This document shows positions 11,775-58,943 of a stretch of DNA of 64,000 nt, in pieces; within the stretch, counting starts at the first letter, position 1; each line of letters starts with the position of its first letter. The notes under the pieces are model-generated. The model saw only the letters and a program-made list of their open reading frames with translations, was not told where the DNA came from and ran no database searches. A program made the position numbers and the translations under genes. Where the stretch lies: IMG/VR virus record IMGVR_UViG_3300049215_000771, positions 468,730 to 532,729 of that record. One strand, written 5' to 3'.

Positions 11775-11971
11775 CTACGGCGTGTCTTCCTTTTTTTCTC
11801 GTTCCTTCTGGATCGACTCCATAATGGAGTTGGTGAAAGCATACCCGCATCTGGTACATTTCCACATGCGCTCGCTTTCTGGAGCCTTGTACGGATCGGC
11901 GTACCGATCTTCCATGTATTCCAGGTCCAGTTCACAATCACCGCCGCAGATGCAACAAGTCGTGTCATGTA
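11775..11971 (-). CDS. Zn-ribbon protein
   Basis: CCICGG...CTRCG; start approximate. Confidence 0.5.
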
Positions 11972-12213
11972 GCATCGTCGATGCTCCTGTGTTTCTTGTT
12001 GACCACCACTTCGATGGGATCAACACAAACAACACTCCCATCTGCCAGTTCCACAATTATACAAAGACCGTGGGAGTCGTGGTACTCTCGAACGTACCCG
12101 ACTCCCTCCACCGGCTCTCCGTGATGTTCTGTGTCGTATTCGTTGCCGTTGGTGCCTCGGAAGTATACCGTTTTACCAACGGCATCACGACACTTCTCCC
12201 ACAAATTTCTCAT
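11965..12213 (-). CDS. Small protein with C-terminal HRSIDD
   Basis: KKHRSIDDAT*. Confidence 0.65.
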   Translation of the reverse strand: MRNLWEKCRDAVGKTVYFRGTNGNEYDTEHHGEPVEGVGYVREYHDSHGLCIIVELADGSVVCVDPIEVVVNKKHRSIDDAT

Positions 12214-13412
12214 TTCTTCAACACCACCGAAGAACCATCGCTCCGATCCCGAATCTCACAACCCAGGTCGATGATCCTTCTTTTCAGGGCATCGGCCCCA
12301 GCCCAATTTCGCTGCCGCCTGCATTCCTCTCGGAGTTTGGCAAGCTGGATGGCGTCGTCGGGAGCATCCTCATCCGAGAACATCTGGAAACCGAGTAATT
12401 CGGCTTGCTCCAGGCTGGGATTCACGAAAGTCGCTGCGATGGCTTCCGAAGTATTCAGGTTGGCGTCCATCGCCTTGGCGAAATCTTCCGAAACTCCATG
12501 TTCTGGTGCCGACTTCAGCCGATTCCTCAAAGCCTTCCACTGTTGCGCCGAAGTCCCATCCAACAACCCTTCAACGGATAAAGGTTTGGCATAACTGGCC
12601 GAGAGAATCCAGAAGCGAATCACGTTGGGGTCCGTGCCATTCGCCCGATAGTCCCGGATGTTGACGGCGTTCCCCTCGGATTTTCCCATCCTCCTGTCGC
12701 CGATCTGAACCATCCCATTGTGGAGCCAGATGTCCGCCAAGGGCGATCCGGCATGAAGGCATTCGGACTGAGCGATCTCATTCTCGTGATGCGGAAACTT
12801 CAAATCGTCGCCGCCCACATGAATATCCACCGTGAACCCAATGGTCCTTTCAATCATGATGGAGCATTCAAGATGCCAACCAGGTCGCCCCTTGGGGAAT
12901 TCAGACTCATTGGCCTTCGGCCCCTTCCACAAAACGAAATCTTCCGCCGTTTTCCGACGTGAAAGTTTCCCATATCCAGGGAACGTCTTCGTTTTGAAGC
13001 GAATGTCGCCATCTTTGTGGTAAGCATGGCCACTTTCGACAAGCGCCGTAGCTGCAACCTTCATCGGGATCATGTAGTCCGTCACACGGGGGTACAAGTC
13101 CGCCTTCTGGACGTTCAGCCAGCCCATGTCATTGAAATAGTCGTCGATGAAGCGGTCAGCCAGTTCTTTGCTGGTCACGCCCTCCTTTGCCGCCCGATCC
13201 ACGATTTTGTCGTCCACGTCCGTAAAATTCTGAACGTGGTAGACCTTCTGCCGGCGTTTGAGCCAGCGTTTCAGCACGTCCCACACAACATAGCTCCTGG
13301 CGTGTCCCAGGTGGCAGTAGTCGTAGACCGTTACACCACAAGCGTACATAGTGATCGGGCGGTCACTAGGGACTTCTTTTTCACGCCGGGTTAGGGAGTC
13401 GTGCAGTTTCAT
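12210..13412 (-). CDS. cysS: Cysteine--tRNA ligase (compact)
   Basis: MYACGVTVYDYCHLGHAR, NFTDVDDKI, GRPGWHLECS, FPHHENEIAQ, RMGKS. Confidence 0.96.
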   Translation of the reverse strand: MKLHDSLTRREKEVPSDRPITMYACGVTVYDYCHLGHARSYVVWDVLKRWLKRRQKVYHVQNFTDVDDKIVDRAAKEGVTSKELADRFIDDYFNDMGWLNVQKADLYPRVTDYMIPMKVAATALVESGHAYHKDGDIRFKTKTFPGYGKLSRRKTAEDFVLWKGPKANESEFPKGRPGWHLECSIMIERTIGFTVDIHVGGDDLKFPHHENEIAQSECLHAGSPLADIWLHNGMVQIGDRRMGKSEGNAVNIRDYRANGTDPNVIRFWILSASYAKPLSVEGLLDGTSAQQWKALRNRLKSAPEHGVSEDFAKAMDANLNTSEAIAATFVNPSLEQAELLGFQMFSDEDAPDDAIQLAKLREECRRQRNWAGADALKRRIIDLGCEIRDRSDGSSVVLKK

Positions 13413-15479: not shown

Positions 15480-15562
15480 TGTCCAAGGTGGGAGTCGAAC
15501 CCACAAGTCCTTGCGGACGCCAGCCCCTCAAGCTGGTGCGTTTACCGTTTCGCCACTTGGAC
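15480..15562 (-). tRNA. tRNA-Leu(GAG), long arm
   Basis: CCAGC-TTGAGGG-GCTGG. Confidence 0.95.
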
Positions 15563-15761
15563 AAAAATCGTCGTCTATGCTTCTCCAATCTTTCGGTTTT
15601 GCTGGTGGAAGTTTGCGAGCAAACCTCCCGTAATGCCTTTCGTCTACCACAAGACCGCCCCAGCCTTTACCAAACCATCGCTTCCCGGTCCATTCTTTGT
15701 CTTCCGGTCGGACGGTTTCACCAACTTCAAGAAACCGATACCCTGGAGGCGGTTTTCTCAT
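15528..15761 (-). CDS. Small protein with WRSIDD motif
   Basis: PPPGYRFLEVGE...KDWRSIDDD; runs into the tRNA. Confidence 0.55.
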   Translation of the reverse strand: MRKPPPGYRFLEVGETVRPEDKEWTGKRWFGKGWGGLVVDERHYGRFARKLPPAKPKDWRSIDDDFCPSGETVNAPA

Positions 15762-16014
15762 CTTGCACCTGAACAAAACACGTCCCTGGAGGCAAGTAGA
15801 AACTTTTCACCCTCCATGTCATTTCCGGCAGGACGTATTCGATCTCAATGATCCTACCTTCTTTCACCAACTCATCCAGTAAGTCGGGCACGTCGATGTC
15901 GTTCATCGACAGCTTCGTGACCACTTCCTCGTCCGCAGCAAGCTGCGTTGCTTTGCACCCCTGAAGGGAGATGATCTTGTCCACAAGAAACTGCTTGGCC
16001 TCGTCCCTATTCAT
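15727..16014 (-). CDS. Winged-helix-like hypothetical protein
   Basis: LLDELVKEGRI. Confidence 0.55.
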   Translation of the reverse strand: MNRDEAKQFLVDKIISLQGCKATQLAADEEVVTKLSMNDIDVPDLLDELVKEGRIIEIEYVLPEMTWRVKSFYLPPGTCFVQVQDEKTASRVSVS

Positions 16015-18355: not shown

Positions 18356-18369
18356 GACAACCTCTCAAG

Positions 18370-18455: not shown

Positions 18456-18512
18456 AAATCATACCCCAATTTTAGGGCATTGTAAACCAGGTCTTGCTAA
18501 CTACAATTCACC

Positions 18513-28356: not shown

Positions 28357-28560
28357 TCACTCAATCTCACTGACAAATTCTACACGTCGCCCACGTCGTT
28401 TAACATCCTTGTTCAAATCAATTCTCATCCAGCAGTATTGCCCGGTCGATATTCCCATTTCAGCCAGGTACTTCTGGCACGCTTCGACGATTTCACTTTC
28501 CGTCAGGGTCACGACCGCCTTCTTATTGCCCTTCGCTTTGCGGAATCGCATCGTCGTCAA
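28357..28560 (-). CDS. Hypothetical protein
   Basis: Small ORF. Confidence 0.5.
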   Translation of the reverse strand: MTTMRFRKAKGNKKAVVTLTESEIVEACQKYLAEMGISTGQYCWMRIDLNKDVKRRGRRVEFVSEIE

Positions 28561-28717
28561 TGCTCCGGTACTTCGGCTTCTTCAGCAGCGGCTTGCCATC
28601 CCACAATCGCTTCAGATTTTCCCACTCCCACACAGTCCTGGCTCGTAGCTCGAAGGCTTCTTCCAGGTTCCAGCCCGCCGCCCGAAGGTTGGCGATTTCT
28701 TCCTCGTTAAATAGCAT
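28523..28717 (-). CDS. Small protein with YRSIDD motif
   Basis: KKPKYRSIDDD. Confidence 0.6.
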   Translation of the reverse strand: MLFNEEEIANLRAAGWNLEEAFELRARTVWEWENLKRLWDGKPLLKKPKYRSIDDDAIPQSEGQ

Positions 28718-29192
28718 CGAGCATGTCCTTGATCTTGGCGTACTTCTCCCACACGATCTGAGCGTCGTGCTTGTTGATATAACCGAACGAGAAAAAGCAA
28801 GGATAGCCATTCACCCCACGAGGACCAGCTTTGTCGTAATACTCGTAGATCATGCCGATGTCTTGCTTGTACTCGTCCGTGGCGTCGGCAAACGCTCCCA
28901 GGACGAGCGGCATGAAAATCATGCCCAGGTGCGTGATGTCAAATTCCCGAACATGCCGGTCAGTAAACACCAGGTTCATGGCGATGTCTTTCGCCAATTG
29001 CGTCAGGTACTCCGATGGCTTGTTGTCGATTGCCTTGGGCTTCAACGCCCCGACAGCCCAATCTCCCTTCATGGGGGCTTCTGAAACTTCTTCTTTCACC
29101 ATCATTGCCTCAGTACAGCGTTCACAGTCGCATTCACAACCACCCATGCGCCAGCTTGTCTGACACAACCCCTGGCGACAATGTTCTACCAT
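28707..29192 (-). CDS. Hypothetical phage protein
   Basis: IYEYYDKAGPRGVNGYPCFFS; start uncertain. Confidence 0.65.
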   Translation of the reverse strand: MVEHCRQGLCQTSWRMGGCECDCERCTEAMMVKEEVSEAPMKGDWAVGALKPKAIDNKPSEYLTQLAKDIAMNLVFTDRHVREFDITHLGMIFMPLVLGAFADATDEYKQDIGMIYEYYDKAGPRGVNGYPCFFSFGYINKHDAQIVWEKYAKIKDMLDAI

Positions 29193-36536: not shown

Positions 36537-37548
36537 CGACAGGCTCCAGAAAAAGATGAGGAATGGTAATCTTCGTGCCTTCCTCATCCAGAAAACAAAC
36601 CACAGCGGTTGCTGAACTTCGGTTGACTTGCAAAATGGTGCCCGCCTCCAACACCATCTTCGCCTTCTGGCGAGTTTTCTCCCGTAGCTCGGCCCACCGA
36701 ATACCGTGGTAGAAATTAGGCTTGTTCGGTTGCGGCATGACGGCGATAGTGGTGTTCAACCGAAGGCGAGGCTCCAAAGCCTTCTGCTTGGCTTCCGCCA
36801 CTTTCGTCAGATGGGTTTTCTTCCTGCCGTAGCTGGCTTCTTCGGCAATACCGGCCTTGGTCTGCTTGAGAATAGCCGCCAGCTTATTCTTGTGCCCGTT
36901 TTTGCGCTCGTTGTAAACCTTCCGAAGTTCGGCGACTTGCTGGTTTGTGAGAAATGCCTTTCCTTTCAACAAGTTGCATATTTCACAGTAAGTTTGCAGA
37001 TTGTCCATCCGGTCGGGACCGCCGTTGGAACTGGCGAGAATGTGATCTTTCGTGAACAAAACCTGCCTACCGTCCTCGATGGCATAAAGGTTGAAGTGTG
37101 CCCGCCCCTCCTTGGTCGAGCGATCACGCTCCAGGTACATTTCTGTACCGACGAGGCCACAGGCTTGACAGGTGCAGTTGTCCCTGGCGAACAAATGGTA
37201 TCGTTGCGACACCATGCTGACCTTGTAGATCGTGCCGTCCTCAGCCTTCCAGTCCATCAAATCTTCATCGGGACTGGTATGATGTTGGCTTACCTCATTG
37301 CCTTTGCCGGCGTAGCGACTGACACGGCGATGTTTCAGGACTTCTTCGGGATTGAACGGACCACCCACCCGTGCCTTACGAGAAACCCGCTCGGCACAAC
37401 GATTGGCCTTGACTTTGATGGTGAGTTTCTGCCAGACTTCTGGAGGCAGGTGTTCCTCCAGAACCTTGCGAACTTCCAGGTCGAATTGATCTTGGGCGAT
37501 TTTGTGGGATTCGGAGTCGGTTGCTTCGGCTTCAAACTGCCACGTCAT
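36424..37548 (-). CDS. HNH-domain protein
   Basis: CQACG...TKDHILASSNGG...NLQTYCEICN; start uncertain. Confidence 0.8.
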   Translation of the reverse strand: MTWQFEAEATDSESHKIAQDQFDLEVRKVLEEHLPPEVWQKLTIKVKANRCAERVSRKARVGGPFNPEEVLKHRRVSRYAGKGNEVSQHHTSPDEDLMDWKAEDGTIYKVSMVSQRYHLFARDNCTCQACGLVGTEMYLERDRSTKEGRAHFNLYAIEDGRQVLFTKDHILASSNGGPDRMDNLQTYCEICNLLKGKAFLTNQQVAELRKVYNERKNGHKNKLAAILKQTKAGIAEEASYGRKKTHLTKVAEAKQKALEPRLRLNTTIAVMPQPNKPNFYHGIRWAELREKTRQKAKMVLEAGTILQVNRSSATAVVCFLDEEGTKITIPHLFLEPVDEQEKRQAGGAGGEVQGQGLDNRTELGGQPEGVVGGP

Positions 37549-48564: not shown

Positions 48565-49098
48565 ATGAATGATGCACCCATTGAAAAAGTTACAGTCCAA
48601 GTGCGGGGGAAGGATGTTATCCTTGATCCCGACAACATGAAGTTCAGCGATGCGTCCTTGTCAGAGTACATGGACAAGGAGTATGGCTGGGTGGATTATT
48701 TCGGCAAACAGTTGGAATTTGCCAACAAGGATTGTCTGGACGCCGAGATTTTGTACGAGGAAGCCTACGCCAAGAAATACTGCGAGGCCAAGGACATGGG
48801 CTGGACGGAAACCCGCTCCAAGCAATTTGCCCTGGCCGATCCCGTTGTGAACCAAGGTCGCAAGGACGTGGCGAAAGCGAAGGAAATTGCTGCGCTTATC
48901 AAAGCCCATTTGAAGGCGTGGGACAAGAACCACGAGAACGCTCAGAACCGTGGGCATACGCTACGCAAGGAGATGGAGAAGTTGCACCGGGAAATCTACA
49001 AGACGCCCGGCCCGCTCCCGGAAGATGCCACGGTCGCTATCGACGAAGATTTTTTCAAGGTGAAGTCTGCGGAGGTTCTTCCCCAAAATGGAGAGTAA
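48565..49098 (+). CDS. UvsY-like helical protein
   Basis: Helical pattern, ALADP, next to helicase. Confidence 0.5.
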   Translation: MNDAPIEKVTVQVRGKDVILDPDNMKFSDASLSEYMDKEYGWVDYFGKQLEFANKDCLDAEILYEEAYAKKYCEAKDMGWTETRSKQFALADPVVNQGRKDVAKAKEIAALIKAHLKAWDKNHENAQNRGHTLRKEMEKLHREIYKTPGPLPEDATVAIDEDFFKVKSAEVLPQNGE

Positions 49099-49333
49099 AT
49101 GGGATTTCCAGACTGCCCTGGGTGACACCATTCGGGAGAAATACGAGTCTTTGTATGTCAAAGTCGTCGAAGTCTCCAACGTAATTAACAGGAAGATGGT
49201 TCGAGGGCAGGCTAATTGGGTTGTTACTTCTCCCGAAGTGGCCTCCATGTTTTTTGAAACAGTTGATGTTGTAGCTGACCAGAAGAAGAAAAAATATCGC
49301 TCCATTGACGACCCCTGGGAATCGTATGAGTGA
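49088..49333 (+). CDS. gp23-like capsid fragment with YRSIDDPW tail
   Basis: EKYESLYVKVVEVSNVINRKMVRGQANWVVTSPEVAS. Confidence 0.7.
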   Translation: MESKWDFQTALGDTIREKYESLYVKVVEVSNVINRKMVRGQANWVVTSPEVASMFFETVDVVADQKKKKYRSIDDPWESYE

Positions 49334-49544
49334 TTACATCCAAAATGCCTTGGATCAATATCAGGCACAACGGGCGGACGAGATGTTCAGAAAGGCTCAG
49401 GAAGCATTGGGGGATATGGTTGTTTTCCTCAAACAGAATCCCATCGTGAGTCCTGGGCGTGACGACTACTTTGCGATGAACAAAGCATGGCTGAAGAAAA
49501 AGAAGAAGAAATATCGGTCAATCGACGATCCGTGGCAGACATGA
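49326..49544 (+). CDS. Small protein with YRSIDDPW tail
   Basis: KKKKYRSIDDPWQT*. Confidence 0.7.
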   Translation: MSDYIQNALDQYQAQRADEMFRKAQEALGDMVVFLKQNPIVSPGRDDYFAMNKAWLKKKKKKYRSIDDPWQT

Positions 49545-49780
49545 CTTACGACGAGATTTGTGAAGCAATTGACAACGGCGTAATCCCTGTTGAGTTTCCC
49601 AAGTGGCAGTGGAATATGACGGATTACGAACATCCGGTGTCGCTTGCTCCCGAAATATACCAAAACAGAAAGGGAATTCTCACCCGATACGGGCGAAAAC
49701 TTCTTGCCGAGCGTGAGGAACGTGAGATCAACGAGAAGAAGAAATACCGCTCGATTGACGACCCCTGGGAGGCGTCATGA
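49541..49780 (+). CDS. Small protein with YRSIDDPW tail
   Basis: KKKYRSIDDPWEAS*. Confidence 0.7.
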   Translation: MTYDEICEAIDNGVIPVEFPKWQWNMTDYEHPVSLAPEIYQNRKGILTRYGRKLLAEREEREINEKKKYRSIDDPWEAS

Positions 49781-50055
49781 AGAAATGCTACAAGTTCAAA
49801 TCCATGCTCGACAGGGATTTGTACATAAACATACCTTCCAGTTCGCACTATCGGATGGTGAAGCCTGGCATGGAGTTTACCTTCGAGGGCGACTGGCATC
49901 CTTATTGGGAAGATTTGATCTACAAAGGCTATGTCGCCCTGGTTGAAATCAATGAACCTCGACAGCCTGTTGACCCCTATTCGCTCCTGACGCCCAATCC
50001 GACGAAACCTGGCAAGTACCGTTCCATTGACGATCCGGGACACTACGATGATTGA
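49777..50055 (+). CDS. Small protein with YRSIDDP tail
   Basis: GKYRSIDDPGHYDD*. Confidence 0.7.
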   Translation: MKKCYKFKSMLDRDLYINIPSSSHYRMVKPGMEFTFEGDWHPYWEDLIYKGYVALVEINEPRQPVDPYSLLTPNPTKPGKYRSIDDPGHYDD

Positions 50056-50686
50056 CCCTACTAAGATCACCAACTATAAGCAGACCCGTCACCAACTCGA
50101 AGAAGTTCTGATCTTCTGGATTTGTGTGGCTGGCAAAACCGCCCTTCAAATTGCACCCCGCCTCGACCGGCTTCTGAAGAAATGGAAGCCTATGGCAATG
50201 GGGAAAAACCCTACGCCATTCGACATCATCAAGCAAATCAACTACCGTGGCAATCTGGCCGAAGAACTGAAATCTCACGGCATTGGTTGCTACAATCAGA
50301 AGGCTCGGTCACTTCTTTGTTTGATATGGGCTGGGTTGGATTTGAAGAAGTGTACGGTCGAAGACCTTGAGAAAATACCAGGCATTGGTCCTAAAACAGC
50401 CCGGTGTTTCCTCATGCACAGCCGCAAGGACGCCGAACACGCCGGCCTGGATACGCATGTCCTTAAATTCATGGGCGACCTGGGGTACGAGGTTCCCAAG
50501 GGCACACCCACTGGCAAGCGTTATCGGGATTTGGAGAAAACCTTCATCATGCTTGCGAGGCGAGTGGGGATGAGCGTGGCGGACTTCGATTTGCTGATCT
50601 GGAACGCTTATTCCGGCAATAAGGGCAAGCCGGAAGATGTTCTGGAGATGTTCGACATCATTCCGTACAGGAGGAAGCTGGCGTGA
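50048..50686 (+). CDS. HhH-GPD DNA glycosylase-like
   Basis: LEKIPGIGPKTA...LDTHV. Confidence 0.85.
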   Translation: MIDPTKITNYKQTRHQLEEVLIFWICVAGKTALQIAPRLDRLLKKWKPMAMGKNPTPFDIIKQINYRGNLAEELKSHGIGCYNQKARSLLCLIWAGLDLKKCTVEDLEKIPGIGPKTARCFLMHSRKDAEHAGLDTHVLKFMGDLGYEVPKGTPTGKRYRDLEKTFIMLARRVGMSVADFDLLIWNAYSGNKGKPEDVLEMFDIIPYRRKLA

Positions 50687-50931
50687 AGCTGGTTGTTCTT
50701 CACAAATATGGTTACATCAGTTGTCAGACGAGTAAGTACCCCACGGGAATTTATTGGCCGGGCGACATCATCGAGGATGATGCGCCCGCCGACAAATACT
50801 TCCAGTGGATTCAGGAAGGGGCTGTAGCGATTGTTCCAGATTCTACGCCGGTCATTATTCGTACTCCTGAACCCGTGAACGGCAGGAAATATAGAACAAT
50901 TGATGACTGGTCGGAATACTACACCGCTTAG
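50683..50931 (+). CDS. Small protein with YRTIDD tail
   Basis: RKYRTIDDW. Confidence 0.65.
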   Translation: MKLVVLHKYGYISCQTSKYPTGIYWPGDIIEDDAPADKYFQWIQEGAVAIVPDSTPVIIRTPEPVNGRKYRTIDDWSEYYTA

Positions 50932-51844
50932 GGATCGGGATGTACGTCCTGGGGTATTCCTTCTGCGGTCCCATGCGGTCGATGATCGGGATGCGATTCG
51001 GCAATCCTCCAAGGAGGCCGAAGATGGCTTTGTCGGGACTTTTGGCGTAGATCAATTCGCCACGTTCCTTGCCGCATTCTTTGGAGATGAAGGCACTCAA
51101 GGAGGCGGCTGTGACAATATCTTCTCCGTTAGGGCAAATGACGGGATCACGGGCTGCCATTGCGCAGAAAACCTTCTCCATGATCTTGCCCTGGGTGCAG
51201 AAGTAGCTGACTTTGCTGGCCGGGCTGCTGGCTGACATCGAGAACAAGTCTTGTTGTTTCGGCGTCAGTGAGGAGATAGGTGGTAGATGAGCGCCGGCGT
51301 GACAACTTGTTTGCCACCAGAAGGTTTCCTGGTCATTTTCTTCGGCGCATTCGGCAAGAATCTTCATGATTCCTGCCCGTTGGCCCAGGCGCATGACGGA
51401 ACCATTCTCGCTGCCGTGCCCGATGGTGTAGATAACGAAGGTATCTCCTGGAGCGGCTTTGACCTTCATTTGTTCGTTGACAAACTTCTTCAAGCCTGAA
51501 AGATCGGTTGGGTCGCTCCACACCATTCGGTCGGTTTTTCCTTTGTCATCGACGTGGAAATTGCCGACATCTTCGATGGTCAAGCCTTTGCTAGACGCCA
51601 ATTTAGCGGCCTGGACGACTTCATTTGCGTCGGTGTTGGCGATAGAATCAGGACAGTGCTTCAGGACGAGAATACGGACGGAAATAGCGGGGAGTGGAAC
51701 TTCTCCGACATATTCGGAGATGGAATTTGTTACAATGATGGGTTTGAACGGCTTCTGTTTGGTTTGTGTCTTTGGTTGAATGCAGATGATTGACGCTACA
51801 ACCAAGGCAAACACTGTTGCCGCAAACAACAAGAATCTTATCAT
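50855..51844 (-). CDS. Membrane-anchored clan CD (caspase-like) peptidase
   Basis: VIYTIGHG and QTSCHAG His/Cys dyad; N-terminal TM. Confidence 0.65.
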   Translation of the reverse strand: MIRFLLFAATVFALVVASIICIQPKTQTKQKPFKPIIVTNSISEYVGEVPLPAISVRILVLKHCPDSIANTDANEVVQAAKLASSKGLTIEDVGNFHVDDKGKTDRMVWSDPTDLSGLKKFVNEQMKVKAAPGDTFVIYTIGHGSENGSVMRLGQRAGIMKILAECAEENDQETFWWQTSCHAGAHLPPISSLTPKQQDLFSMSASSPASKVSYFCTQGKIMEKVFCAMAARDPVICPNGEDIVTAASLSAFISKECGKERGELIYAKSPDKAIFGLLGGLPNRIPIIDRMGPQKEYPRTYIPIPKRCSIPTSHQLFYISCRSRVQEYE

Positions 51845-51889
51845 GGACCTCCTCTCATAATACAAATAGGTAGGGGGAGTAAACGAAAA

Positions 51890-53596
51890 ATGGCAACTGA
51901 ACCATTCAAGCTGAAAGTCTGGCATCTTCATCCAAAGCACGGGCGAGTGATTGCTGCGGAACGTACACTAAATGGCACTGGTCATCCTGGGGCGCTGAAA
52001 CTTTGTGGCCCTTACACCAATGCCAACAAATCTGGCTACTGGTTGTTTCCCCCTGTTGACATCGACATTATGTGGAAGGGTGGTAAGGATTTCGACATCC
52101 GACAGTACGAGAATTGGGACGATGAAGACTATCGCCTGGTTCGCCGGCTTATCTTGCCGCAGGATGCCGCCCATTTGGACGTTTGGAGCCTGGAAGGGGA
52201 AGGTAGGAACAAATTTACTTGGGGAGCGGTGGAAGATGGTGTCGTCCAGATGTGGACGGGAAATATCTTTGAGACACCGCCCGGCTGGTGTTTGCATATC
52301 CGCAGTCCGATCAACTGGCCTCCACGTTCCTGCTATGTGATGGAAGGCGTCCTGGAAACCGACTTCATGCAGCAGGACATCTGGACAAACATTGTTTTCA
52401 CCAAACCTGGTGAGTGGGTGGAGTTCAGGAAAGATGGTTGGCCTCCACTGGCCCAGCTTCAGGTAATTCGTCGTGAAGGGTTTGCCGAGAAGTGGGAAGT
52501 GGAAGAAGAAATGGTGAATCGGGACACGCCGGAAGCAAATCGGGTATTCGAGTATTGGGTGAATTTCAATGAGCAGAAGTTTGCCAAAGGCGGCAAGCAG
52601 GCGTTGTTGCCGGATATGAGTCGCACGAAGGATGGCACCACCTTCTACAAAGAAAAAGCTCGGTGTCTTGGTGGGGCGATGGAACCCAAGGCTGAAGTTA
52701 TTGCGCCGCACGGGTGTCCTTTCCACAAGCCCAAGGACAGAACAGTGGTATTTTGCATCAATGATGCACCACGTTATCAGGAGATGTTCCTGCACGCCGT
52801 TGGGATGTTACGAAAGCACAACGCAACGATACCCGTGAAATTGATATACATTGACGGCAAAGATCAGGATTTCATGCGTGGCTGTGCCAGATATAACGTC
52901 CAGGTTATTCAAAGGCCGTGGTTCCGCCCGGAGGCTCAATACTTCTCGATCAACAAGTATTGGCTGCATGAACTCCAAGAAGATTCTGTGCTATACTTAG
53001 ACGTGGATTTGTTCATTAACGGCGATGTATCGACGTTGTTTGACAAATATCGCACTGAGTTTACGGCGATTGAGAGCAAGTGGGCATATGGCAAGGGCTG
53101 GAAGGATGATTTCTTGCCTAATGGCCACAAGCCGGTCAATTCGGGTGTTCAGTTGTTCCACGGTGGGTATCACCGTAAAATGTTCTCGGCGTTATCAGAA
53201 GCGTTTGACCGTTTGAGTGGGCATGATACACCGCTGGCTCACTGGTCATGGAACTACTACAACGGCTGCTTGCGAGAGGAACTGGCATGTACGTTGATCT
53301 TGTCGGAGATGAATCCAAGTTATTCGTATTTCCAGGCCAGGGATTGTTACAACATTGAGCGAAGTGAGGATGTTGCCAGGTGTCACGAGTCGATCATCTT
53401 CCACAGCTACACTCGGCAGTGGGAGTTGGTGAAACGATGGTATGCACAACGCCGCAAGATGGTCTGGCCGAAACGCCCTGATTGTGGTACAACTTTTTGT
53501 TGTATTCACGAACAAGGAGCGGCCAATGGCTCACATTCGCTGGATGATACGCAGGGACATGCCGGAAGTGATGGAAGCAGAGCGCCTTTGTCATGA
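51890..53596 (+). CDS. DUF6065-like domain fused to a GT-A glycosyltransferase
   Basis: CGPYTNANKSGY...GVLETDF; YLDVD, NSGV, IFH. Confidence 0.7.
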   Translation: MATEPFKLKVWHLHPKHGRVIAAERTLNGTGHPGALKLCGPYTNANKSGYWLFPPVDIDIMWKGGKDFDIRQYENWDDEDYRLVRRLILPQDAAHLDVWSLEGEGRNKFTWGAVEDGVVQMWTGNIFETPPGWCLHIRSPINWPPRSCYVMEGVLETDFMQQDIWTNIVFTKPGEWVEFRKDGWPPLAQLQVIRREGFAEKWEVEEEMVNRDTPEANRVFEYWVNFNEQKFAKGGKQALLPDMSRTKDGTTFYKEKARCLGGAMEPKAEVIAPHGCPFHKPKDRTVVFCINDAPRYQEMFLHAVGMLRKHNATIPVKLIYIDGKDQDFMRGCARYNVQVIQRPWFRPEAQYFSINKYWLHELQEDSVLYLDVDLFINGDVSTLFDKYRTEFTAIESKWAYGKGWKDDFLPNGHKPVNSGVQLFHGGYHRKMFSALSEAFDRLSGHDTPLAHWSWNYYNGCLREELACTLILSEMNPSYSYFQARDCYNIERSEDVARCHESIIFHSYTRQWELVKRWYAQRRKMVWPKRPDCGTTFCCIHEQGAANGSHSLDDTQGHAGSDGSRAPLS

Positions 53597-54023
53597 GGAC
53601 GCTTGGACTGAGGACCAGTTCATCGCTTGTTTGCAACAACGGAATTGCATCGGTATGGTTGCCGAAATTCAGGAGTTCGTTGTTGGGTATATGGTTTACG
53701 AACTCTACAAGAACCATTTGTGGCTGGTAAATCTGGCGGTCCATCCGAAATGGCAGGGCCAGGGTATTGGCCGTGAGATGGTGGAGAAATTGAAAGGCAA
53801 ATTGTCTACTCATCGTCGATCTGCGATACACATGAAAGTTTCTGAGCGCTGCCAAGGCGCTCATTTCTTCCTTCGGAAGATGGGCTTCCGAGCAACAAGG
53901 GTGGAAAGAAACTTCTTTCTTGTAGGCGGGGAGTTTGAAGACGCCTATCACTTCCGCTTCGTGCTGGGCCACCCCTACAGACACGAACGGGCAGTCGAGG
54001 AACTGTTGTGTCAGGGAAAATGA
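53526..54023 (+). CDS. rimI: RimI-like GNAT acetyltransferase
   Basis: HIRWMIRRDMPEV, LAVHPKWQGQGIG, EDAY. Confidence 0.85.
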   Translation: MAHIRWMIRRDMPEVMEAERLCHEDAWTEDQFIACLQQRNCIGMVAEIQEFVVGYMVYELYKNHLWLVNLAVHPKWQGQGIGREMVEKLKGKLSTHRRSAIHMKVSERCQGAHFFLRKMGFRATRVERNFFLVGGEFEDAYHFRFVLGHPYRHERAVEELLCQGK

Positions 54024-54034
54024 GATGGACGAAA

Positions 54035-54472
54035 ATGAGCAACGACCCGAATGATATAGGCTGGGTTGGTTGTTTGATCCCGGTCGTCATTTTCGGAATC
54101 GCTGGCTTGATTGCTTTCGGTATTTATGGCTGTGTTCAACACTTCAAAAATGAACAACTGATCCAAAATACCGTCACCCAGGACAACCACAAAGAAGTTG
54201 TTCGGTTGAAGAAAGATGTCATCACTTGTTTGAAGTTGAGGGCCAAGCACGCTCAGGAGTGGAAGTTCAAAACATGCGATGACTACGAACTCGTCACCAT
54301 CCAGAACTCTCAGGATTGGAACAGCACAGGGCGAGGGAGCGGCTACTGGTCGGATAGTGTAGAAATCTGGATGAAAGTGAAGCGACCTTTTGTCCTAGAG
54401 ATGAACTACAAGAACGAGAAGGGAAACGACAAGTTCTTGTACCTCAAGATGGACTTCATGCCGGACAAGTGA
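54035..54472 (+). CDS. Membrane-anchored hypothetical protein
   Basis: N-terminal TM. Confidence 0.6.
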   Translation: MSNDPNDIGWVGCLIPVVIFGIAGLIAFGIYGCVQHFKNEQLIQNTVTQDNHKEVVRLKKDVITCLKLRAKHAQEWKFKTCDDYELVTIQNSQDWNSTGRGSGYWSDSVEIWMKVKRPFVLEMNYKNEKGNDKFLYLKMDFMPDK

Positions 54473-54525
54473 AAGGAGAGGCCAGGAAATAATCCTGGCC
54501 TCACTCATTTTACAGTTGCCTCAAA

Positions 54526-54873
54526 TCAGGGTACTATGTTGATGTTCACGCAGCCATCGAACGGAATGAAAACCACTCCGTCGTAGCGGAACCAGCAGTA
54601 TTGAACCGGACACCAGTAGCACCAGCACCCATAGCGAACGCTCCAGGAGCGGCAGCTATAGCCGACCCAGGTGGATCGGTAGCAGTAGTGGCGGTAGGTG
54701 TAACCACGATAGCTGTAGCCAAAGTAGTGAACACTGCGGGCACCAGGCGGAACATGGCCTGGATGTCCAGGATGGCCTGGATGTCCTCCGGGATGTCCTC
54801 CACGATGTTGAGCAAGCGCAGGCGAAACGAGGAACAAACAGGCAACAAGGGCTGCCAGAAGATACTTCGTCAT
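54526..54873 (-). CDS. Secreted GHP-repeat, Tyr/Cys/Trp-rich protein
   Basis: Signal peptide, GHP repeats, YGCWCYWCP. Confidence 0.7.
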   Translation of the reverse strand: MTKYLLAALVACLFLVSPALAQHRGGHPGGHPGHPGHPGHVPPGARSVHYFGYSYRGYTYRHYCYRSTWVGYSCRSWSVRYGCWCYWCPVQYCWFRYDGVVFIPFDGCVNINIVP

Positions 54874-54918
54874 AGCTTTACCTCCAAAGAAACACTTCAT
54901 CATATGTAGGAGAGGAAC

Positions 54919-55602
54919 ATGAAACTTATTCTTCGAGATCGAAACCAGGGCATGATTGATGCCTGGAAAGTTCACTTCAAGAACCTTCCTGAAGTTGAAA
55001 TTGGCTGCGGTGATATTTTTGACACCCCCGCTGATGCCATTGTTAGTCCCGCCAACAGTTTTGGTTTCATGAATGGCGGTATTGACCTGGCGTACAGCAA
55101 GCGTTTCGGCTGGCAACTTCAGAACAGGTTACAAAAACACTTGTACGAAAACCATGATGGTGAATTGCCAGTTGGTGAAGCAACTATGATCCCGATTGAG
55201 GTTCCTACCGAATCCTACAAGTACCTGATCTCGGCACCAACCATGAGGGTTCCGACTGACATCGACGGAACCGTGAATGCTTACTTGGCGATGCGTGCGA
55301 TCCTTCGTCTAGTAAAACACTTCAACCAGAAGAACTTGCGCCAGGCCGAGTACGACTCGATACGTTCGGGAAAAACAATCATTCCAGAAGCCATCAATTC
55401 CGTCATTTGTCCAGGTTTGGGCACCGCCATTGGCCGACTTCCGTACAATGTAGCAGCTTACCAGATGCGGGAAGCCTACAGGGTTGTGATGGAAAATCAA
55501 CCACATGATTTTCACGACATCGCCGGCTCGTATTGTTATCACGATGCCATGAGGCGAGGCTTGCCGTATAGGGAGCAAGAAGCGTTATTTGGTGAGGCAT
55601 GA
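54919..55602 (+). CDS. Macro domain ADP-ribosylhydrolase
   Basis: GDI, VSPANSFGFMNGGID, APTMRVP, PGLGT. Confidence 0.92.
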   Translation: MKLILRDRNQGMIDAWKVHFKNLPEVEIGCGDIFDTPADAIVSPANSFGFMNGGIDLAYSKRFGWQLQNRLQKHLYENHDGELPVGEATMIPIEVPTESYKYLISAPTMRVPTDIDGTVNAYLAMRAILRLVKHFNQKNLRQAEYDSIRSGKTIIPEAINSVICPGLGTAIGRLPYNVAAYQMREAYRVVMENQPHDFHDIAGSYCYHDAMRRGLPYREQEALFGEA

Positions 55603-56081
55603 TTCAGTACGTTGACAAGAAGCGTGGCAAGTACCGGAGCATTGACGACGACACGCCACCCGACGCCCCGGATGTGATGACCCTCGATGAGTTCCTGGAG
55701 TTGTTCGACAATGCAGGGACGGTATCATTGTGGGATTTCAACTGCGCCCTGGGCACTACCTGCCGTGAGAAGTATGAAAGTCTGTGGATGAAGTTGCTGG
55801 AACTGGCGGGGGTCATCTCGCAGAAAATTGGCAAACAGATGACTTATTGGGCGGCTGTTCATCCCTGTGTGGGGACTGCTTGTTTTCAGGGGTTCAGTCA
55901 TTCACCCCGGCTTATTCCGATGGGTGGGACCGAACCTATTTACCTGGGAACTCTTTGCCAAAGGATGGAGATTTTCGAGTGTCCTCTACCGGACCCGACC
56001 CGGATTCTGGTAGGATGTGGCAACGAGAAGATGACTCCTGAGCATTACGCCAGATTGTCGTTGTGTAACTACGTTATTTGA
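55599..56081 (+). CDS. gp23-like capsid fragment with N-terminal YRSIDD
   Basis: WDFNCALGTTCREKYESL matches 49088-49333. Confidence 0.7.
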   Translation: MIQYVDKKRGKYRSIDDDTPPDAPDVMTLDEFLELFDNAGTVSLWDFNCALGTTCREKYESLWMKLLELAGVISQKIGKQMTYWAAVHPCVGTACFQGFSHSPRLIPMGGTEPIYLGTLCQRMEIFECPLPDPTRILVGCGNEKMTPEHYARLSLCNYVI

Positions 56082-56088: not shown

Positions 56089-56730
56089 ATGAAGGTCTAC
56101 GAAGAACATCACGTTTTCAACCCCGTTCAAAGGGATCAGTATCAGACCAAGATCACGGTCGAGGATATTGATACGCTGGGTGCCGCCCAGCAATATGCCG
56201 ACCCTTGCTGCCTGAATTTTGCTTCGCACAAGCGTCCTGGCGGCGGGTACAAAAGCGTGCAACATATTCCCATGCCCATCAAAACTCAGGAAGAAGACTT
56301 GTTCCGCAGGTCCAATCTCCCGGAGATGATGGACAACAAGCATGTCCGGCAGCACTACCCGCTGAACACTACGAAAGGGTTGTACTGCAACAACGTGCAG
56401 GTGGATCGGGACCAAATGCTGGTTCAGCACGATCCGTACTTCCTTTCTCTCATCACTGTGGCGGCACTGGTCAATCCTGGCCTGGAGCATCCGATGACGG
56501 AGAGGAAGGTTCGACGCATTCTGGAGATCGCCGCCGACAACAACGAGAAGACTCTCATCTTGGGTGCCTGGGGCTGTGGAGCGTTCCGTAACGACCCTGA
56601 TGAGATTGCCGGGTTGTTCAAGAAATATCTGGAGAATGAGTTCCGTGGTGTGTTCGAGACAGTTGTGTTTGCTATTCCCGGCAAGCAAAGCAGGAACTTC
56701 CAGGTTTTTGAAAGTGTTCTGAAAGGGTGA
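56089..56730 (+). CDS. Microbial-type PARG (TIGR02452/DUF2263)
   Basis: LNFAS..PGGG...QEEDL, ILGAWGCGAFRNDP. Confidence 0.9.
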   Translation: MKVYEEHHVFNPVQRDQYQTKITVEDIDTLGAAQQYADPCCLNFASHKRPGGGYKSVQHIPMPIKTQEEDLFRRSNLPEMMDNKHVRQHYPLNTTKGLYCNNVQVDRDQMLVQHDPYFLSLITVAALVNPGLEHPMTERKVRRILEIAADNNEKTLILGAWGCGAFRNDPDEIAGLFKKYLENEFRGVFETVVFAIPGKQSRNFQVFESVLKG

Positions 56731-56731: not shown

Positions 56732-57811
56732 ATGATAGAGCCGAAATACGATCTTAGCATCGCCATGCCTATTTGCGATGCTACCAAAGCATTCTACAAG
56801 CGCTACGAAGATCACAAAAAATATGGTCTGTTGAATATCAAGGATCGAAAAATTCAACTCAAGTTGCTTATTGGGCCGGGCGAGGATTTCTACGGCCATG
56901 ACATCAAGGCGGGTTGGCCGAGTGGTATTGATGTCGTGGTTGTTGAAACGCCCTATTGTGACGTAGCCAGGAAGATTGCTTGGTTTTTCGATACAAACCC
57001 TGATGAAGAAATCATGGAGGCTCGGTGGCACGCAAAATGGGATGATGACAGCCTGAACGACATCGACACATTGATTCGGTGGTTGGACGAGGATTACGAT
57101 TGGACTCGTGCAGAATACCTAGCAGGGGATGTTCACTACGATCTTGACGACAATACGATGAAGTCGTTGCGGAAGGTTGGGTATGACCATCTTCGCTATC
57201 ATGAGCGACTTGTCCACGAACTAGAAGTTTCTGTTTGTTCTCAGGCGGCGATGATGACTGTGCGTCGGAATGAGAAAGCCAAGGAATACCTCACGGAGCG
57301 ACTGAAGTATTTCGGAGGGTTTGGCGATCATGCCCTTTGTATCATGATGTATTTCTGCAAAATCCATCCTGTCAGAGCAAGTTTTCTTTCCTTCTGGAAT
57401 GAGTTGCCGAAGTTTAGTTTTTTCGGTGGCAAGTTTGCGCACGTTCACATGCACCAAGAAGATCAAACAGAGCCTCGTACATTCGCTGTCGCCAAAGCGA
57501 TTATCGACGGGGTTAAGAACAAGGGTCTGGCCAGGGCCGCTGACAATAGATTTTTCTTTGCCAGGGGCACTGGTGATTCGAGGGATTACATCGGGGAATT
57601 GTTGTTCAGCGCCGAACACAGGATGATAGATTTCAACCATATGGCTGCCGGGCTGTGGGGACCATCCAGACAAGGTGATGGCATTGTTGTGGTTTTTCAA
57701 TCGAGTCCCTGGCTCGCTTTCGACCTGGAGCCATCAGAAGATGGTGGTTTTCAGGGCATCTGTCCAGATACGAGGCTCCCGTTGAAGATGGATTTTGTTG
57801 GGCCTAAATAA
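56732..57811 (+). CDS. Glycosyltransferase-like protein (paralogue 1)
   Basis: WHAKWDDDS. Confidence 0.6.
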   Translation: MIEPKYDLSIAMPICDATKAFYKRYEDHKKYGLLNIKDRKIQLKLLIGPGEDFYGHDIKAGWPSGIDVVVVETPYCDVARKIAWFFDTNPDEEIMEARWHAKWDDDSLNDIDTLIRWLDEDYDWTRAEYLAGDVHYDLDDNTMKSLRKVGYDHLRYHERLVHELEVSVCSQAAMMTVRRNEKAKEYLTERLKYFGGFGDHALCIMMYFCKIHPVRASFLSFWNELPKFSFFGGKFAHVHMHQEDQTEPRTFAVAKAIIDGVKNKGLARAADNRFFFARGTGDSRDYIGELLFSAEHRMIDFNHMAAGLWGPSRQGDGIVVVFQSSPWLAFDLEPSEDGGFQGICPDTRLPLKMDFVGPK

Positions 57812-57815
57812 TGAC

Positions 57816-58943
57816 ATGAGAGAACCAAAGTATGATATGAGTGTCGCAATGCCGATAACGGATTCGACACAGGCTTTCTTCAGGCGATACGAAGACCAGA
57901 AAAAATATGGGTATCTAAATATCAAGGACAGGAAGTTACAACTTAGGCTTCTTGTCGGACCTCATGAAAAGTTCGAGGGTGAGGATATAACCCAGGGCTG
58001 GCCACAGGGAATGGATGTCGATGTGGTCAGAAGCCCATATATGGATGTTGCCCGCAAGGTTATTCACTTCTACGCCACGCAGACTCAGGAGGATATTGAG
58101 TCTGCTCGCTGGCACGCCAGATTTGACGATGATACCATGAACGATATTGACCAGCTAATCACCTGGCTGGACGAGGATTTTGACTGCCAAAGGCCAGTTT
58201 ATGCCGTCACGGATTTGCGTGACGAGATTGAAGAAAAAGAAAGCATCATTCTCAAGGGTATGGGCTACGGACATTTGTTTGGGCGGTTTTGGCGGCATGG
58301 CAATATCAACTATCAGCATAGAGGGACCGGGGCGAGCTACCACCATAGTCACAGGATTAGGCATGAATGGGAGGGGGCTGTTGTTTCTCGGCAAGCCCTG
58401 ATGGAGATGCAGGACAACCAGAAGTCGAAGACATATTTCGCCGAGCGATTGAAGTTGCCGGGAGGTTTGGGCGATCAGTGTTTGGGTATTGCTTTGTATT
58501 TCTGCAAAATACACCCGTATCAAGCTGGGTATATGTCATACAGGCATGAAGAAGTTCCTGAATTCACTTTGTTCGGCGGCAAGATGGCTCATGTCCATCT
58601 TCAGCTTGATCGGGTTGAAACTCTTTGGATGGACGTGTTAAAGCTCATTCTTGATGTTGGTTCTAACCGCTGTAGTGATATACTGGTCAATAGGCGATGG
58701 GAGTTCACCAAGGACGACGGAGAACACAACAGGTGCGTGTTTTTCAATAACCATCGGTTTGTTTCTGAACATGGCTCTCCGGGTTTGTGGGCACCAGTAG
58801 GTGACGGCATAATGATGGTGTTCAATGACAGGCCGAATTGCGGATATAGGCTGTTTCCAGTAGACGACACGATGCTCGAAGGTGTATGTTCAGAAACAGG
58901 TTTTGCGGTTAGGATCAGCGTTGTCCCAAGCAAGGTGTTTTAG
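57816..58943 (+). CDS. Glycosyltransferase-like protein (paralogue 2)
   Basis: WHARFDDDT; collinear with the previous ORF. Confidence 0.6.
   Translation: MREPKYDMSVAMPITDSTQAFFRRYEDQKKYGYLNIKDRKLQLRLLVGPHEKFEGEDITQGWPQGMDVDVVRSPYMDVARKVIHFYATQTQEDIESARWHARFDDDTMNDIDQLITWLDEDFDCQRPVYAVTDLRDEIEEKESIILKGMGYGHLFGRFWRHGNINYQHRGTGASYHHSHRIRHEWEGAVVSRQALMEMQDNQKSKTYFAERLKLPGGLGDQCLGIALYFCKIHPYQAGYMSYRHEEVPEFTLFGGKMAHVHLQLDRVETLWMDVLKLILDVGSNRCSDILVNRRWEFTKDDGEHNRCVFFNNHRFVSEHGSPGLWAPVGDGIMMVFNDRPNCGYRLFPVDDTMLEGVCSETGFAVRISVVPSKVF

What the first reader, a model, noticed from the sequence alone, without database searches (positions are those of the whole stretch)
49088..56081. Two tagged fragments of a gp23-like major capsid protein
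Seen: 49088-49333 and 55599-56081 share WDF..ALG.T.REKYESL, and both carry YRSIDD. The first continues SNVINRKMVRGQANWVVTSPEVAS, which resembles the T4-type gp23 segment (RG.GNF...S..VA) from memory; the second extends to YLGTL...RILVG. Established: capsid proteins trigger defences such as Lit and CapRel. Inference: decoys or assembly modulators derived from the phage's own capsid gene.
Basis: partly seen in the sequence, partly recalled or inferred. Interest (0 to 1): 0.75.

Follow-up and report, generated by a model that had tools for sequence, protein, structure and literature searches.

The report
Tagged capsid-protein pieces in a megaphage
A 533-kb phage from a moss metagenome encodes about 40 small proteins that share one eight-residue end tag; many, including the two flagged here, are conserved, non-functional-looking pieces of larger proteins such as its own capsid protein, and no searched paper or family library describes this arrangement.

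Summary
ORF 49088-49333 is major capsid protein (MCP) residues 316-368 plus a C-terminal tag (basic run, then YRSIDDPW). ORF 55599-56081 is the same tag at the N-terminus, a disordered linker, and a compact copy of the MCP C-terminal third.

The tag is a peptide, not a DNA repeat: its third codon positions vary freely and Ser uses both TCN and AGC. It ends about 38 small ORFs across the 532,729-bp genome and begins three more. A reversed-motif control gives 1 hit against 44.

Six tagged ORFs carry different MCP segments (55-102, 218-310, 316-368, 307-478, 400-448, 436-463). Others carry a catalytically dead prohead-protease paralogue, a gp32-like SSB core, an SSB piece and a PrkA piece. A relative has a tagged ribosomal bL12 piece.

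The pieces are old and under purifying selection, so they are not pseudogenes. Tagged MCP pieces recur in related phages from independent metagenomes.

What reads the tag is unknown. My best guess (0.33) is a docking peptide that targets its carriers to the assembling head, as the T4 capsid-targeting sequence and encapsulin cargo peptides do. An adaptor or dominant-negative "mimic library" is nearly as likely. The decoy idea is untested.

The parts
49088..49333 (+). ORF1, 81 aa: MCP piece plus C-terminal tag
   Evidence: Open frame. Pfam Gp23 E 1.3e-8. 77-80% identical to own MCP residues 316-368.
49094..49252 (+). MCP-derived body of ORF1 (residues 3-55; strand, long helix, strand, short helix of the A domain)
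   Evidence: BLASTP and phmmer to the MCP. Secondary structure read from the homologous part of the ORF2 model.
49283..49318 (+). Tag of ORF1 (KKKK-YRSIDD-PW)
49326..49544 (+). Tagged ORF, 72 aa from ATG 49326 (TTG 49305 is also possible); body has no known relative
   Evidence: Its start overlaps the end of ORF1.
49487..49780 (+). Tagged ORF (97 aa from ATG 49487; 79 aa from ATG 49541, which overlaps the previous stop); holds MCP residues 436-463
   Evidence: BLASTP E 7e-6, 64% over 28 aa; phmmer 4e-5. The orthologue in L140 keeps the tag.
49777..50055 (+). Tagged ORF, 92 aa; body unknown
   Evidence: The orthologue in L140 keeps the tag; dN/dS 0.17.
50683..50931 (+). Tagged ORF, 82 aa (variant YRTIDD)
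55599..56081 (+). ORF2, 160 aa: N-terminal tag, linker and MCP C-terminal third
55617..55652 (+). N-terminal tag of ORF2 (KKRG-KYRSIDD-D), in a segment modelled as disordered
   Evidence: Residues 1-28 have pLDDT 54-69. The tag is kept at the same place in six 50%-identity cluster representatives.
55698..56078 (+). Compact HK97-fold A-domain-like body of ORF2 (residues 34-160)
   Evidence: pLDDT 89-97 over most of it. Foldseek PDB hits are all capsid proteins: phage P1 E 7.5e-5, T4 gp23/gp24 TMq about 0.5.
28523..28810 (-). Tagged ORF, 95 aa
16007..16399 (-). Tagged ORF, 130 aa; body is a paralogue of an untagged 173-aa ORF at genome 17066-17587
15528..15806 (-). Tagged ORF (variant WRSIDD)
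11965..12255 (-). Tagged ORF (variant HRSIDD)

Best explanation
Shown. ORF1 and ORF2 belong to a family of about 40 small proteins (65-253 aa) in this 533-kb phage. Each is built as a variable body, a basic or proline-rich flexible linker, and a constant eight-residue peptide: aromatic-R-S-I-D-D-(P/D)-W. The peptide is usually at the extreme C-terminus and sometimes at the N-terminus. Many bodies are excised pieces of larger self-assembling or hub proteins that cannot do the parent's job. There are six different segments of the HK97-fold capsid protein, a prohead-protease paralogue without its catalytic His and Ser, a gp32-type SSB core without the canonical acidic tail, an SSB piece and a PrkA piece. 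A relative has a ribosomal bL12 C-terminal-domain piece. Both pieces and tag are kept by purifying selection.

Inferred. The tag is a short linear motif in a disordered tail that docks every carrier on one common receptor.

Favoured guess. The receptor is part of the assembling head (scaffolding core, shell interior or portal), so carriers are brought to or loaded into proheads. The T4 capsid-targeting sequence does this for otherwise unrelated internal proteins, and encapsulin cargo-loading peptides do it for an HK97-fold shell. In that reading the MCP-derived bodies are interface mimics that sit on MCP or core surfaces, and the membrane-anchored carriers would tether proheads to the membrane.
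For: The tag is selected as a peptide. Tyr, Ile and both Asp have zero entropy at codon positions 1-2 but 0.43-0.99 bits at position 3. Arg varies by 1.9 bits at position 3 and uses both CGN and AGR; Ser uses TCN and AGC. No two tags are more than 35/42 nt identical; the median is 20/42.

Terminal position: 38 tags lie 0-13 residues from a stop and 3 are N-proximal; 44 hits against 1 for the reversed motif. In the ORF2 model the tag lies in a disordered tail.

The oldest and most widespread carriers are capsid-derived. MCP 400-448 plus tag is found in G002, G003, G005, G006 and a MAG contig, with variants such as FRDLDDDW and FRTLDDEW. The N-tagged ORF2 type is found in six 50%-identity clusters. 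This links the tag historically to the head.

The dead protease paralogue is 39% identical to the real S77 protease, with the His and Ser motifs replaced.

Bodies evolve fast while the tag stays fixed. Orthologues are 43-62% identical, against 83% for DnaB and 96% for MCP; dN/dS 0.14-0.36. Delivered effector families with a conserved targeting signal show this pattern.

[quoted passage not shown] Encapsulin cargo peptides are cited from my own knowledge.
Against: There are no virion data and no identified receptor. Tagged genes are scattered over the whole genome. In the window they sit in tightly coupled operons with a DnaB helicase, an HhH glycosylase, and Macro and PARG genes rather than in the head module. 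The canonical scaffold, protease and portal do not carry the tag. At least three carriers have predicted membrane helices, which is unusual for capsid cargo. The tag has no sequence likeness to the T4 CTS and is mostly C-terminal. Bodies taken from bL12, PrkA and SSB fit a cytoplasmic adaptor or dominant-negative role at least as well. The MCP-plus-tagged-protein complex prediction gave no answer; that is neither support nor refutation.
Confidence: 0.33

Rival explanations
1. Cytoplasmic adaptor or dominant-negative 'mimic library'. Each body is a binding module cut from a hub or self-assembling protein (MCP, prohead protease, SSB, PrkA, bL12) and still binds that protein's partners. The constant tag couples the bound target to one cytoplasmic effector or fate, such as a protease (degron in trans), a modifying enzyme or a sequestration site. 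The targets could be host proteins, competing phages or the phage's own late proteins.
For: Bodies are truncated or catalytically dead derivatives. PrkA has no full-length copy in the genome. The canonical long-tailed SSB of relatives was not found in the 533-kb record, while the tagged short paralogue was. The pieces keep nearly all MCP-invariant residues under saturated synonymous change, as expected if they must still fit MCP partners. The genes lie in early-type operons. Position 3 of the tag alternates S/T/D among lineages, a pattern often seen at phospho-regulated sites (my own knowledge).
Against: No effector was identified. Pieces 77-88% identical to the own MCP would also poison the phage's own assembly unless they are controlled in time. 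About 29 tagged bodies have no recognisable parent.
Confidence: 0.28
2. Auxiliary scaffolding or assembly regulators for the phage's own very large capsid. MCP-segment mimics transiently occupy MCP interfaces to time or shape assembly. The tag ties them to the core or marks them for removal.
For: The pieces together cover most of the MCP outside the insertion domain. They are strongly conserved relative to the MCP. A protease paralogue is among the carriers. Stand-alone MCP C-terminal thirds are widespread: 124 cluster representatives.
Against: It does not explain the SSB, PrkA, bL12, zinc-ribbon and membrane carriers. ORF1 has no orthologue in 278 related loci, so it cannot be essential to the clade's assembly. 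Tag-poor relatives such as LR756511.1 have a near-identical MCP.
Confidence: 0.15
3. One reading: decoys that bind and blunt host defence sensors of capsid protein (Lit/Gol, CapRel type) and of other conserved phage proteins.
For: MCP and SSB are known trigger classes (my own knowledge). The piece at genome 58150-58437 covers the most conserved N-terminal MCP segment (Pfam positions 3-62), which from memory corresponds to the T4 Gol region. ORF2 sits between Macro and PARG genes, which are typical counter-defence enzymes.
Against: Known sensors are activated, not blocked, by the isolated trigger peptide (my own knowledge). The Macro/PARG neighbourhood is not conserved in relatives. No sensor is known for this unknown host. 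It does not explain the tag or the non-trigger carriers.
Confidence: 0.1
4. Non-functional debris: gene fragments left by recombination, a repeated DNA element read in frame, or an assembly artefact.
For: The ORFs are small and scattered, and ORF1 is so far unique to this genome.
Against: Codon-level variation shows selection on the peptide. pN is far below pS. Frames are intact and translationally coupled. Orthologues occur in independent metagenomes. An independent DNA run covers the region without changes.
Confidence: 0.02

Closest known systems
T4 capsid-targeting sequence (CTS) on internal proteins IPI-III and Alt, and the polymorphic IP locus of T-even phages (PMC3012670)
   Same: A short conserved terminal peptide is the only thing shared by otherwise unrelated, fast-evolving small phage proteins. 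The phage has a gp23-type MCP and an S77 prohead protease. The sets of carriers are lineage-specific.
   Different: The T4 CTS is N-terminal, has a different sequence and is removed by the prohead protease. Here the tag is mostly C-terminal, no cleavage is known and encapsidation is unproven. T4 internal proteins are not pieces of MCP, protease or SSB.
Encapsulin cargo-loading peptides (my own knowledge)
   Same: A roughly 8-10 residue terminal motif sits behind a flexible linker on unrelated cargo. It is mostly C-terminal and sometimes N-terminal, and the partner is an HK97-fold shell.
   Different: There is no sequence likeness and no dedicated encapsulin operon. Binding to the MCP could not be shown (no answer).
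SaPIbov5 Ccm, a capsid-protein homologue that redirects helper-phage assembly (PMC8569155, PMC5052747)
   Same: An HK97-fold MCP derivative is used as something other than the main shell protein.
   Different: Ccm is a full-length MCP homologue that co-assembles and belongs to a satellite. Here the derivatives are 50-170-residue pieces encoded by the phage itself, and they carry a shared tag.
Shared C-terminal interaction tails of replication proteins: bacterial SSB-Ct, and the T7 gp2.5 and gp4 acidic tails (my own knowledge)
   Same: A short acidic or aromatic terminal tail is used as a common docking handle. One carrier here is an SSB core.
   Different: The canonical SSB of related phages ends in a different amphipathic acidic tail. 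The tagged SSB is a shorter paralogue. No large replication enzyme carries the tag.
Capsid-derived triggers of abortive infection: the T4 Gol peptide with Lit, and CapRel (my own knowledge)
   Same: Isolated segments of an MCP have biological activity of their own.
   Different: Those are parts of the full MCP sensed by the host, not separate phage genes. No sensor is known here.

Membership tests
Gp23-type major capsid protein (Pfam PF07068, HK97 fold) | Significant sequence match to the family | tested here: met
   ORF1 scores 35.2 bits against a cut-off of 24.4. ORF2 matches the own MCP at E 7e-17 and its fold matches capsid proteins.
Gp23-type major capsid protein (Pfam PF07068, HK97 fold) | Complete protomer (N-arm, E-loop, P domain, A domain) able to form capsomers | tested here: not met
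   ORF1 covers MCP residues 316-368 only. ORF2 covers 307-478 and lacks the 416-463 loop region. They are derivatives, not capsid proteins.
T4-type CTS-tagged internal head proteins | One short terminal peptide shared by otherwise unrelated small proteins of the phage | tested here: met
   About 40 carriers. Bodies are unrelated to one another.
T4-type CTS-tagged internal head proteins | N-terminal position and removal by the prohead protease at an (L/I)-x-E site | tested here: not met
   38 of 41 credible tags are C-terminal, and no conserved Glu site sits next to the tag.
T4-type CTS-tagged internal head proteins | Presence of the carriers inside proheads or virions | not testable with these tools
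   The phage is uncultured and no proteome exists.
Encapsulin-type cargo-loading peptide | The peptide binds the inner face of the HK97-fold shell protein | tested here: inconclusive
   Complex prediction with the MCP and the tagged protein 49326-49544 scored 0.01 against a mark of 0.32, returned as 'no answer'.
Pseudogene or decaying fragment | Relaxed selection, broken frames, no orthologues | tested here: not met
   pN 0.13-0.14 against pS 0.75-0.79. Frames are intact. Orthologues keep the tag.
Repeated DNA element (promoter, terminator or mobile cassette) read in frame | Conservation at the nucleotide level irrespective of codon position | tested here: not met
   Third positions vary freely and Ser and Arg switch codon families.
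SSB C-terminal interaction tail | The same motif ends the canonical SSB of the clade | tested here: not met
   Canonical SSBs of G001, G002, G004, G005, W01 and L152 end in a D-F-(M/L)-x-E-L type acidic helix. Only the short paralogue carries the tag.
T4 clamp-binding C-terminal tails (gp43, gp33, gp55 binding gp45) | A gp45-type clamp and a family-B polymerase are present, and the polymerase carries the tail | tested here: not met
   The genome has no PF09116 and no PF00136 match. No large protein ends in the tag.
Capsid-sensor decoy (Lit/Gol, CapRel type) | A cognate host sensor exists and is bound without being activated | not testable with these tools
   The host is unknown; an Acidobacteria MAG contig is only a hint.

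The most novel reading that the evidence does not exclude
A protein-level 'variable guide plus constant handle' system. The phage keeps a library of inert pieces cut from conserved self-assembling or hub proteins: capsid protein, prohead protease, SSB and PrkA, and ribosomal bL12 in a relative. Each piece still recognises its parent's partners and is fused to one constant docking peptide that recruits a single effector or destination. The phage could then neutralise, mark or relocate chosen host proteins or the proteins of competing phages.
Probability: 0.22. Interest if true: 0.95.

Novelty: new variant of a known kind. Interest (0 to 1): 0.78.

Why it matters
If the tag is a head-targeting signal, it would be a second, independent cargo-addressing peptide for gp23-type capsids. 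It would define the packaged protein set of a 0.5-Mb phage from sequence alone, and it is short enough to serve as a loading handle for HK97-fold shells. If instead it is an adaptor handle, the family would show that phages use fragments of conserved proteins as recognition modules. That would be a new principle for phage-host or phage-phage conflict. In either case the function of about 5% of the genes of a megaphage becomes testable through one peptide, and the many short gp23-like ORFs seen in huge-phage metagenomes can be read as selected genes rather than annotation noise.

Tried and rejected
1. Complex prediction of the MCP (15-row alignment) with tagged protein 49326-49544: score 0.01, 'no answer'. 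It is not evidence either way.

2. AlphaFold2 of the full MCP with the shallow alignment failed (pLDDT 41), so MCP domain boundaries were not mapped structurally.

3. T4 clamp-tail idea: the genome has no gp45 clamp and no family-B polymerase.

4. SSB-tail idea: the tagged gp32-like protein is a short paralogue, and canonical SSBs of relatives end differently.

5. C13/C14-fold peptidase next to the tagged cluster (50855-51940, minus strand) as the tag reader: no homologue in the tag-bearing relatives G001, G002, G003, G005 and G006.

6. T4 late promoter TATAAATA as a timing marker: a single copy in the genome, so not usable.

7. Recent capture of the pieces from another lineage's MCP: best DNA identity to 160 MCP loci is about 76-82%.

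8. Recent spread of the tag by duplication: no two tags share more than 35/42 nt.

9. Conserved neighbours of the tagged MCP 400-448 piece or of ORF2: none informative.

10. Metatranscriptome contigs: sparse, with none over 49088-50931. This shows nothing about absence.

11. Pfam and PHROG scans of the remaining tagged bodies, and phmmer against all genome ORFs: no further parents.

12. Literature: no paper holds 'YRSIDD' or the relative's accession. Text searches of two huge- and jumbo-phage papers found no mention of capsid-protein fragments or shared terminal tags.

13. A possible likeness of the tag to the MCP strand (R-W-R-L-Y-K-D-P-L) was noted from an alignment. It is only 3/8 identical and was not pursued.


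Full report
**Setting.** The window is the last 64 kb of a single 532,729-bp virus record. IMG/VR labels it a provirus and CheckV rates it 100% complete. DNA runs that hold it come from moss metagenomes. The record has a gp23-type major capsid protein (MCP; genome 338843-340279, 478 aa, Pfam Gp23 289 bits) preceded by a scaffold-sized ORF, an S77 prohead protease and a portal. Of 386 pattern-matched stretches in IMG/VR, 353 encode an MCP relative, and the best 80 are 83-96% identical. The MCP of the 595-kb GenBank record LR756511.1 is 81.5% identical.

**Observation check.** ORF1 (49088-49333, 81 aa) and ORF2 (55599-56081, 160 aa) are open on the + strand.
- They share a 55-residue segment at 44% identity, E 9e-17.
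- ORF1 passes the Pfam Gp23 cut-off: 35.2 bits, E 1.3e-8, profile positions 206-258. It is 77-80% identical to MCP residues 316-368.
- ORF2 matches MCP residues 307-415 by BLASTP (E 7e-17), extending to the C-terminus in the alignment.
- With a 52-row alignment of its family, ORF2 folds with mean pLDDT 85.7. Residues 1-28 (tag and linker) are low-confidence and residues 30-160 are compact.
- Foldseek against the PDB returns only HK97-fold shell proteins: phage P1 head E 7.5e-5; T4 gp23 and gp24, HK97 and encapsulins with TM about 0.5.

**The tag is genome-wide and is a peptide.**
- The strict motif Y-R-S-I-D-D occurs 23 times in the six-frame translation. Twenty-one lie 7-15 residues before a stop in small ORFs and two lie near an N-terminus.
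- A profile and a relaxed pattern add variants with F, W or H in the first place. That gives 44 hits, against 1 for the reversed pattern. Thirty-eight lie 0-13 residues from a stop and three credible ones are N-proximal.
- The consensus is a basic run, then aromatic-R-S-I-D-D, then often P-W and a few acidic residues.
- The conserved residues show no variation at codon positions 1-2 but free variation at position 3. Arg uses CGN and AGR, and Ser uses TCN and AGC. No two copies share more than 35 of 42 nt; the median is 20. Selection therefore acts on the peptide, not on a DNA or RNA element.
- In the window the tag ends four consecutive, translationally coupled ORFs (49088-50055), then 50683-50931, and several minus-strand ORFs. 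It begins ORF2.

**Capsid pieces.** Pfam Gp23 finds the full MCP and four small ORFs, each holding a different part of the profile. BLASTP and phmmer add two more.

| Tagged ORF | MCP residues | Amino-acid identity |
|---|---|---|
| genome 58150-58437 | 55-102 | 88% |
| genome 453411-453812 | 218-310 | 43% |
| ORF1 | 316-368 | 77-80% |
| ORF2 | 307-478 | 35% |
| genome 351357-351617 | 400-448 | 59% |
| window 49487-49780 | 436-463 | 64-69% |

- Together the pieces cover most of the MCP outside its insertion domain.
- ORF2-type proteins lack the 416-463 loop region, and that region is carried by the last two pieces in the table.
- Against the own MCP, synonymous sites are saturated (pS 0.71-0.97) while pN is 0.13-0.14 for the two best-kept pieces. 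dN/dS is about 0.04 where it can be computed.
- No MCP gene in 160 related loci exceeds about 80% DNA identity to any piece.
- The pieces are therefore old paralogues under purifying selection.

**Other bodies.**
- Genome 238157-238627 is 39% identical to the S77 prohead protease over 124 residues, but the His and Ser motifs are replaced.
- Genome 247046-247429 holds PrkA C-domain positions 142-206 (E 3.6e-10). The genome has no full PrkA.
- Genome 36315-36992 is a gp32-type SSB core ending in the tag. The evidence is tblastn E 9e-15 to the relatives' SSB and PHROG 1192. Its orthologue in G002 matches Pfam gp32 positions 7-199 and also ends in the tag, and G002 has a separate canonical SSB.
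- Genome 18099-18464 is an N-terminal tag followed by an SSB piece.
- G002 has a tagged protein with a ribosomal bL12 C-terminal-domain piece (PF00542, E 1e-8). G001 has a tagged DnaJ-type zinc finger with only a weak match.
- At least three carriers have predicted membrane helices.
- About 29 bodies have no recognisable parent.
- No large enzyme carries the tag.

**Distribution.**
- The exact 27-nt back-translated tag finds only three other IMG/VR contigs and one MAG contig labelled Chloracidobacterium. Three of these four hold a tagged MCP 400-448 piece.
- The tag-rich genomes or fragments are G000, G001 (at least six tagged frames in 146 kb), G003 and L140, all from the nearest lineage.
- More distant relatives keep one to three tags, always including the MCP 400-448 piece, with variant tags such as F-R-D-L-D-D-D-W.
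- The two DNA patterns found no tag in LR756511.1, although it has untagged MCP pieces.
- ORF2 has 124 cluster representatives among 1.8 billion proteins. The six nearest keep the N-terminal tag, and many others are untagged stand-alone MCP C-terminal thirds of 140-190 aa.
- ORF1 itself has no orthologue among 278 related loci.
- Between G000 and its nearest relatives, tagged bodies are 43-62% identical, against 83% for DnaB and 96% for MCP. The tag is unchanged.

**What reads the tag.** I could not identify the receptor.
- Ideas tested and dropped: a T4 clamp tail (no gp45, no PolB); the SSB tail (canonical tails differ); and the neighbouring C13/C14-fold membrane peptidase (absent from tag-bearing relatives).
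- One complex prediction, MCP with a tagged non-capsid protein, gave no answer.
- Gene neighbourhoods gave no conserved partner.

**Mechanism.**
- Shown: a constant terminal peptide under peptide-level selection, in a disordered tail, on many unrelated small bodies. Many of these bodies are inert excised modules of self-assembling or hub proteins.
- Inferred: the peptide is a docking motif for one common receptor.
- Favoured (0.33): the receptor belongs to the assembling head. The reasons are that the oldest carriers are capsid-derived, a dead core protease is a carrier, the bodies evolve like delivered effectors, and gp23-type phages already use a shared capsid-targeting sequence for diverse internal proteins (PMC3012670). 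Cytoplasmic tags on membrane proteins could tether proheads to the membrane.
- Nearly as likely (0.28): a cytoplasmic adaptor or dominant-negative mimic library. This fits the bL12, PrkA and SSB bodies and the early-type operon context.
- Less likely: auxiliary scaffolding for the phage's own capsid (0.15), decoys for capsid sensors (0.10) and debris (0.02).

**Comparison and novelty.** The logic resembles the T4 CTS and encapsulin cargo peptides. The use of an MCP derivative recalls SaPIbov5 Ccm (PMC8569155, PMC5052747). The defining features of each were tested where possible and are only partly met (see the membership table). I found no description of a shared tag on fragments of capsid, protease and SSB proteins. 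I file it as a new variant of the shared-targeting-peptide kind. A categorically new reading, the guide-plus-handle mimic library, remains open at about 0.22.

Noticed in passing
window 50855-51940 (-): A 361-aa ORF with an N-terminal membrane helix and a GHG...SCHAG dyad. ESM Atlas look-alikes by features and by structure are Peptidase_C13/C14 (legumain/caspase fold); there is no Pfam hit. It overlaps tail-to-tail with tagged ORF 50683-50931. The nearest relative, L140, lacks both genes. No homologue was found in eight related records. An Asx-type peptidase sitting beside I-D-D tags is a lead, not a finding.
   Followed up: partly
window 54919-55602 and 56089-56730 (+): ORF2 lies between a Macro-domain gene (PF01661, E 2e-9) and a microbial-type PARG gene (PF10021, E 2.6e-16). 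ORF2's start overlaps the Macro gene's stop. Both are ADP-ribose-removing enzymes typical of counter-defence. The neighbourhood is not conserved in relatives.
   Followed up: partly
genome 36315-36992 (outside the window); L255 and L258 in G002: The only gp32-like SSB found in the 533-kb record is a short paralogue ending in the tag. Relatives have a canonical SSB of about 320-360 aa with a long acidic tail a few kb from DnaB. The canonical copy may lie outside the record.
   Followed up: partly
L109:1498-2172 (-) in IMGVR_UViG_3300047160_036266: A related 343-kb phage encodes a tagged 225-aa protein containing a piece of the ribosomal bL12 C-terminal domain (PF00542, E 1e-8).
   Followed up: partly
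window 56732-57811 and 57795-58943 (+): Two adjacent paralogous genes (359 and 382 aa) of unknown function with very similar N-terminal halves. The only Pfam hit is a sub-threshold DUF2695 match.
   Followed up: no
window 54526-54870 (-): A small ORF on the opposite strand with a signal-peptide-like start, His-Pro-Gly repeats and a Cys/Trp/Tyr-rich tail. It has no family hit.
   Followed up: no
whole record: The protein database places this genome's tagged MCP piece on a 673,178-bp contig, while the IMG/VR record is 532,729 bp and labelled 'provirus'. The element may be larger than the record, or it may be flanked by host DNA.
   Followed up: no
L251 (JAYVUD010000002.1, MAG labelled Chloracidobacterium sp.): A 69.8-kb contig binned with an Acidobacteria MAG encodes a tagged MCP 400-448 piece. 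This is either a host hint or a mis-binned phage contig.
   Followed up: no
P0010, P0011 (database proteins, 303 and 277 aa): Stand-alone MCP derivatives made of the insertion domain joined directly to the C-terminal third, without the N-arm or spine helix. Partial MCP paralogues therefore come in several architectures in this clade.
   Followed up: no
window 49286-49321: In an independent DNA run, one contig matches only the tag-coding 36 nt and continues into the flanks of another tagged gene (genome 18099-18464). This is a cross-match between tags, not a rearrangement.
   Followed up: yes
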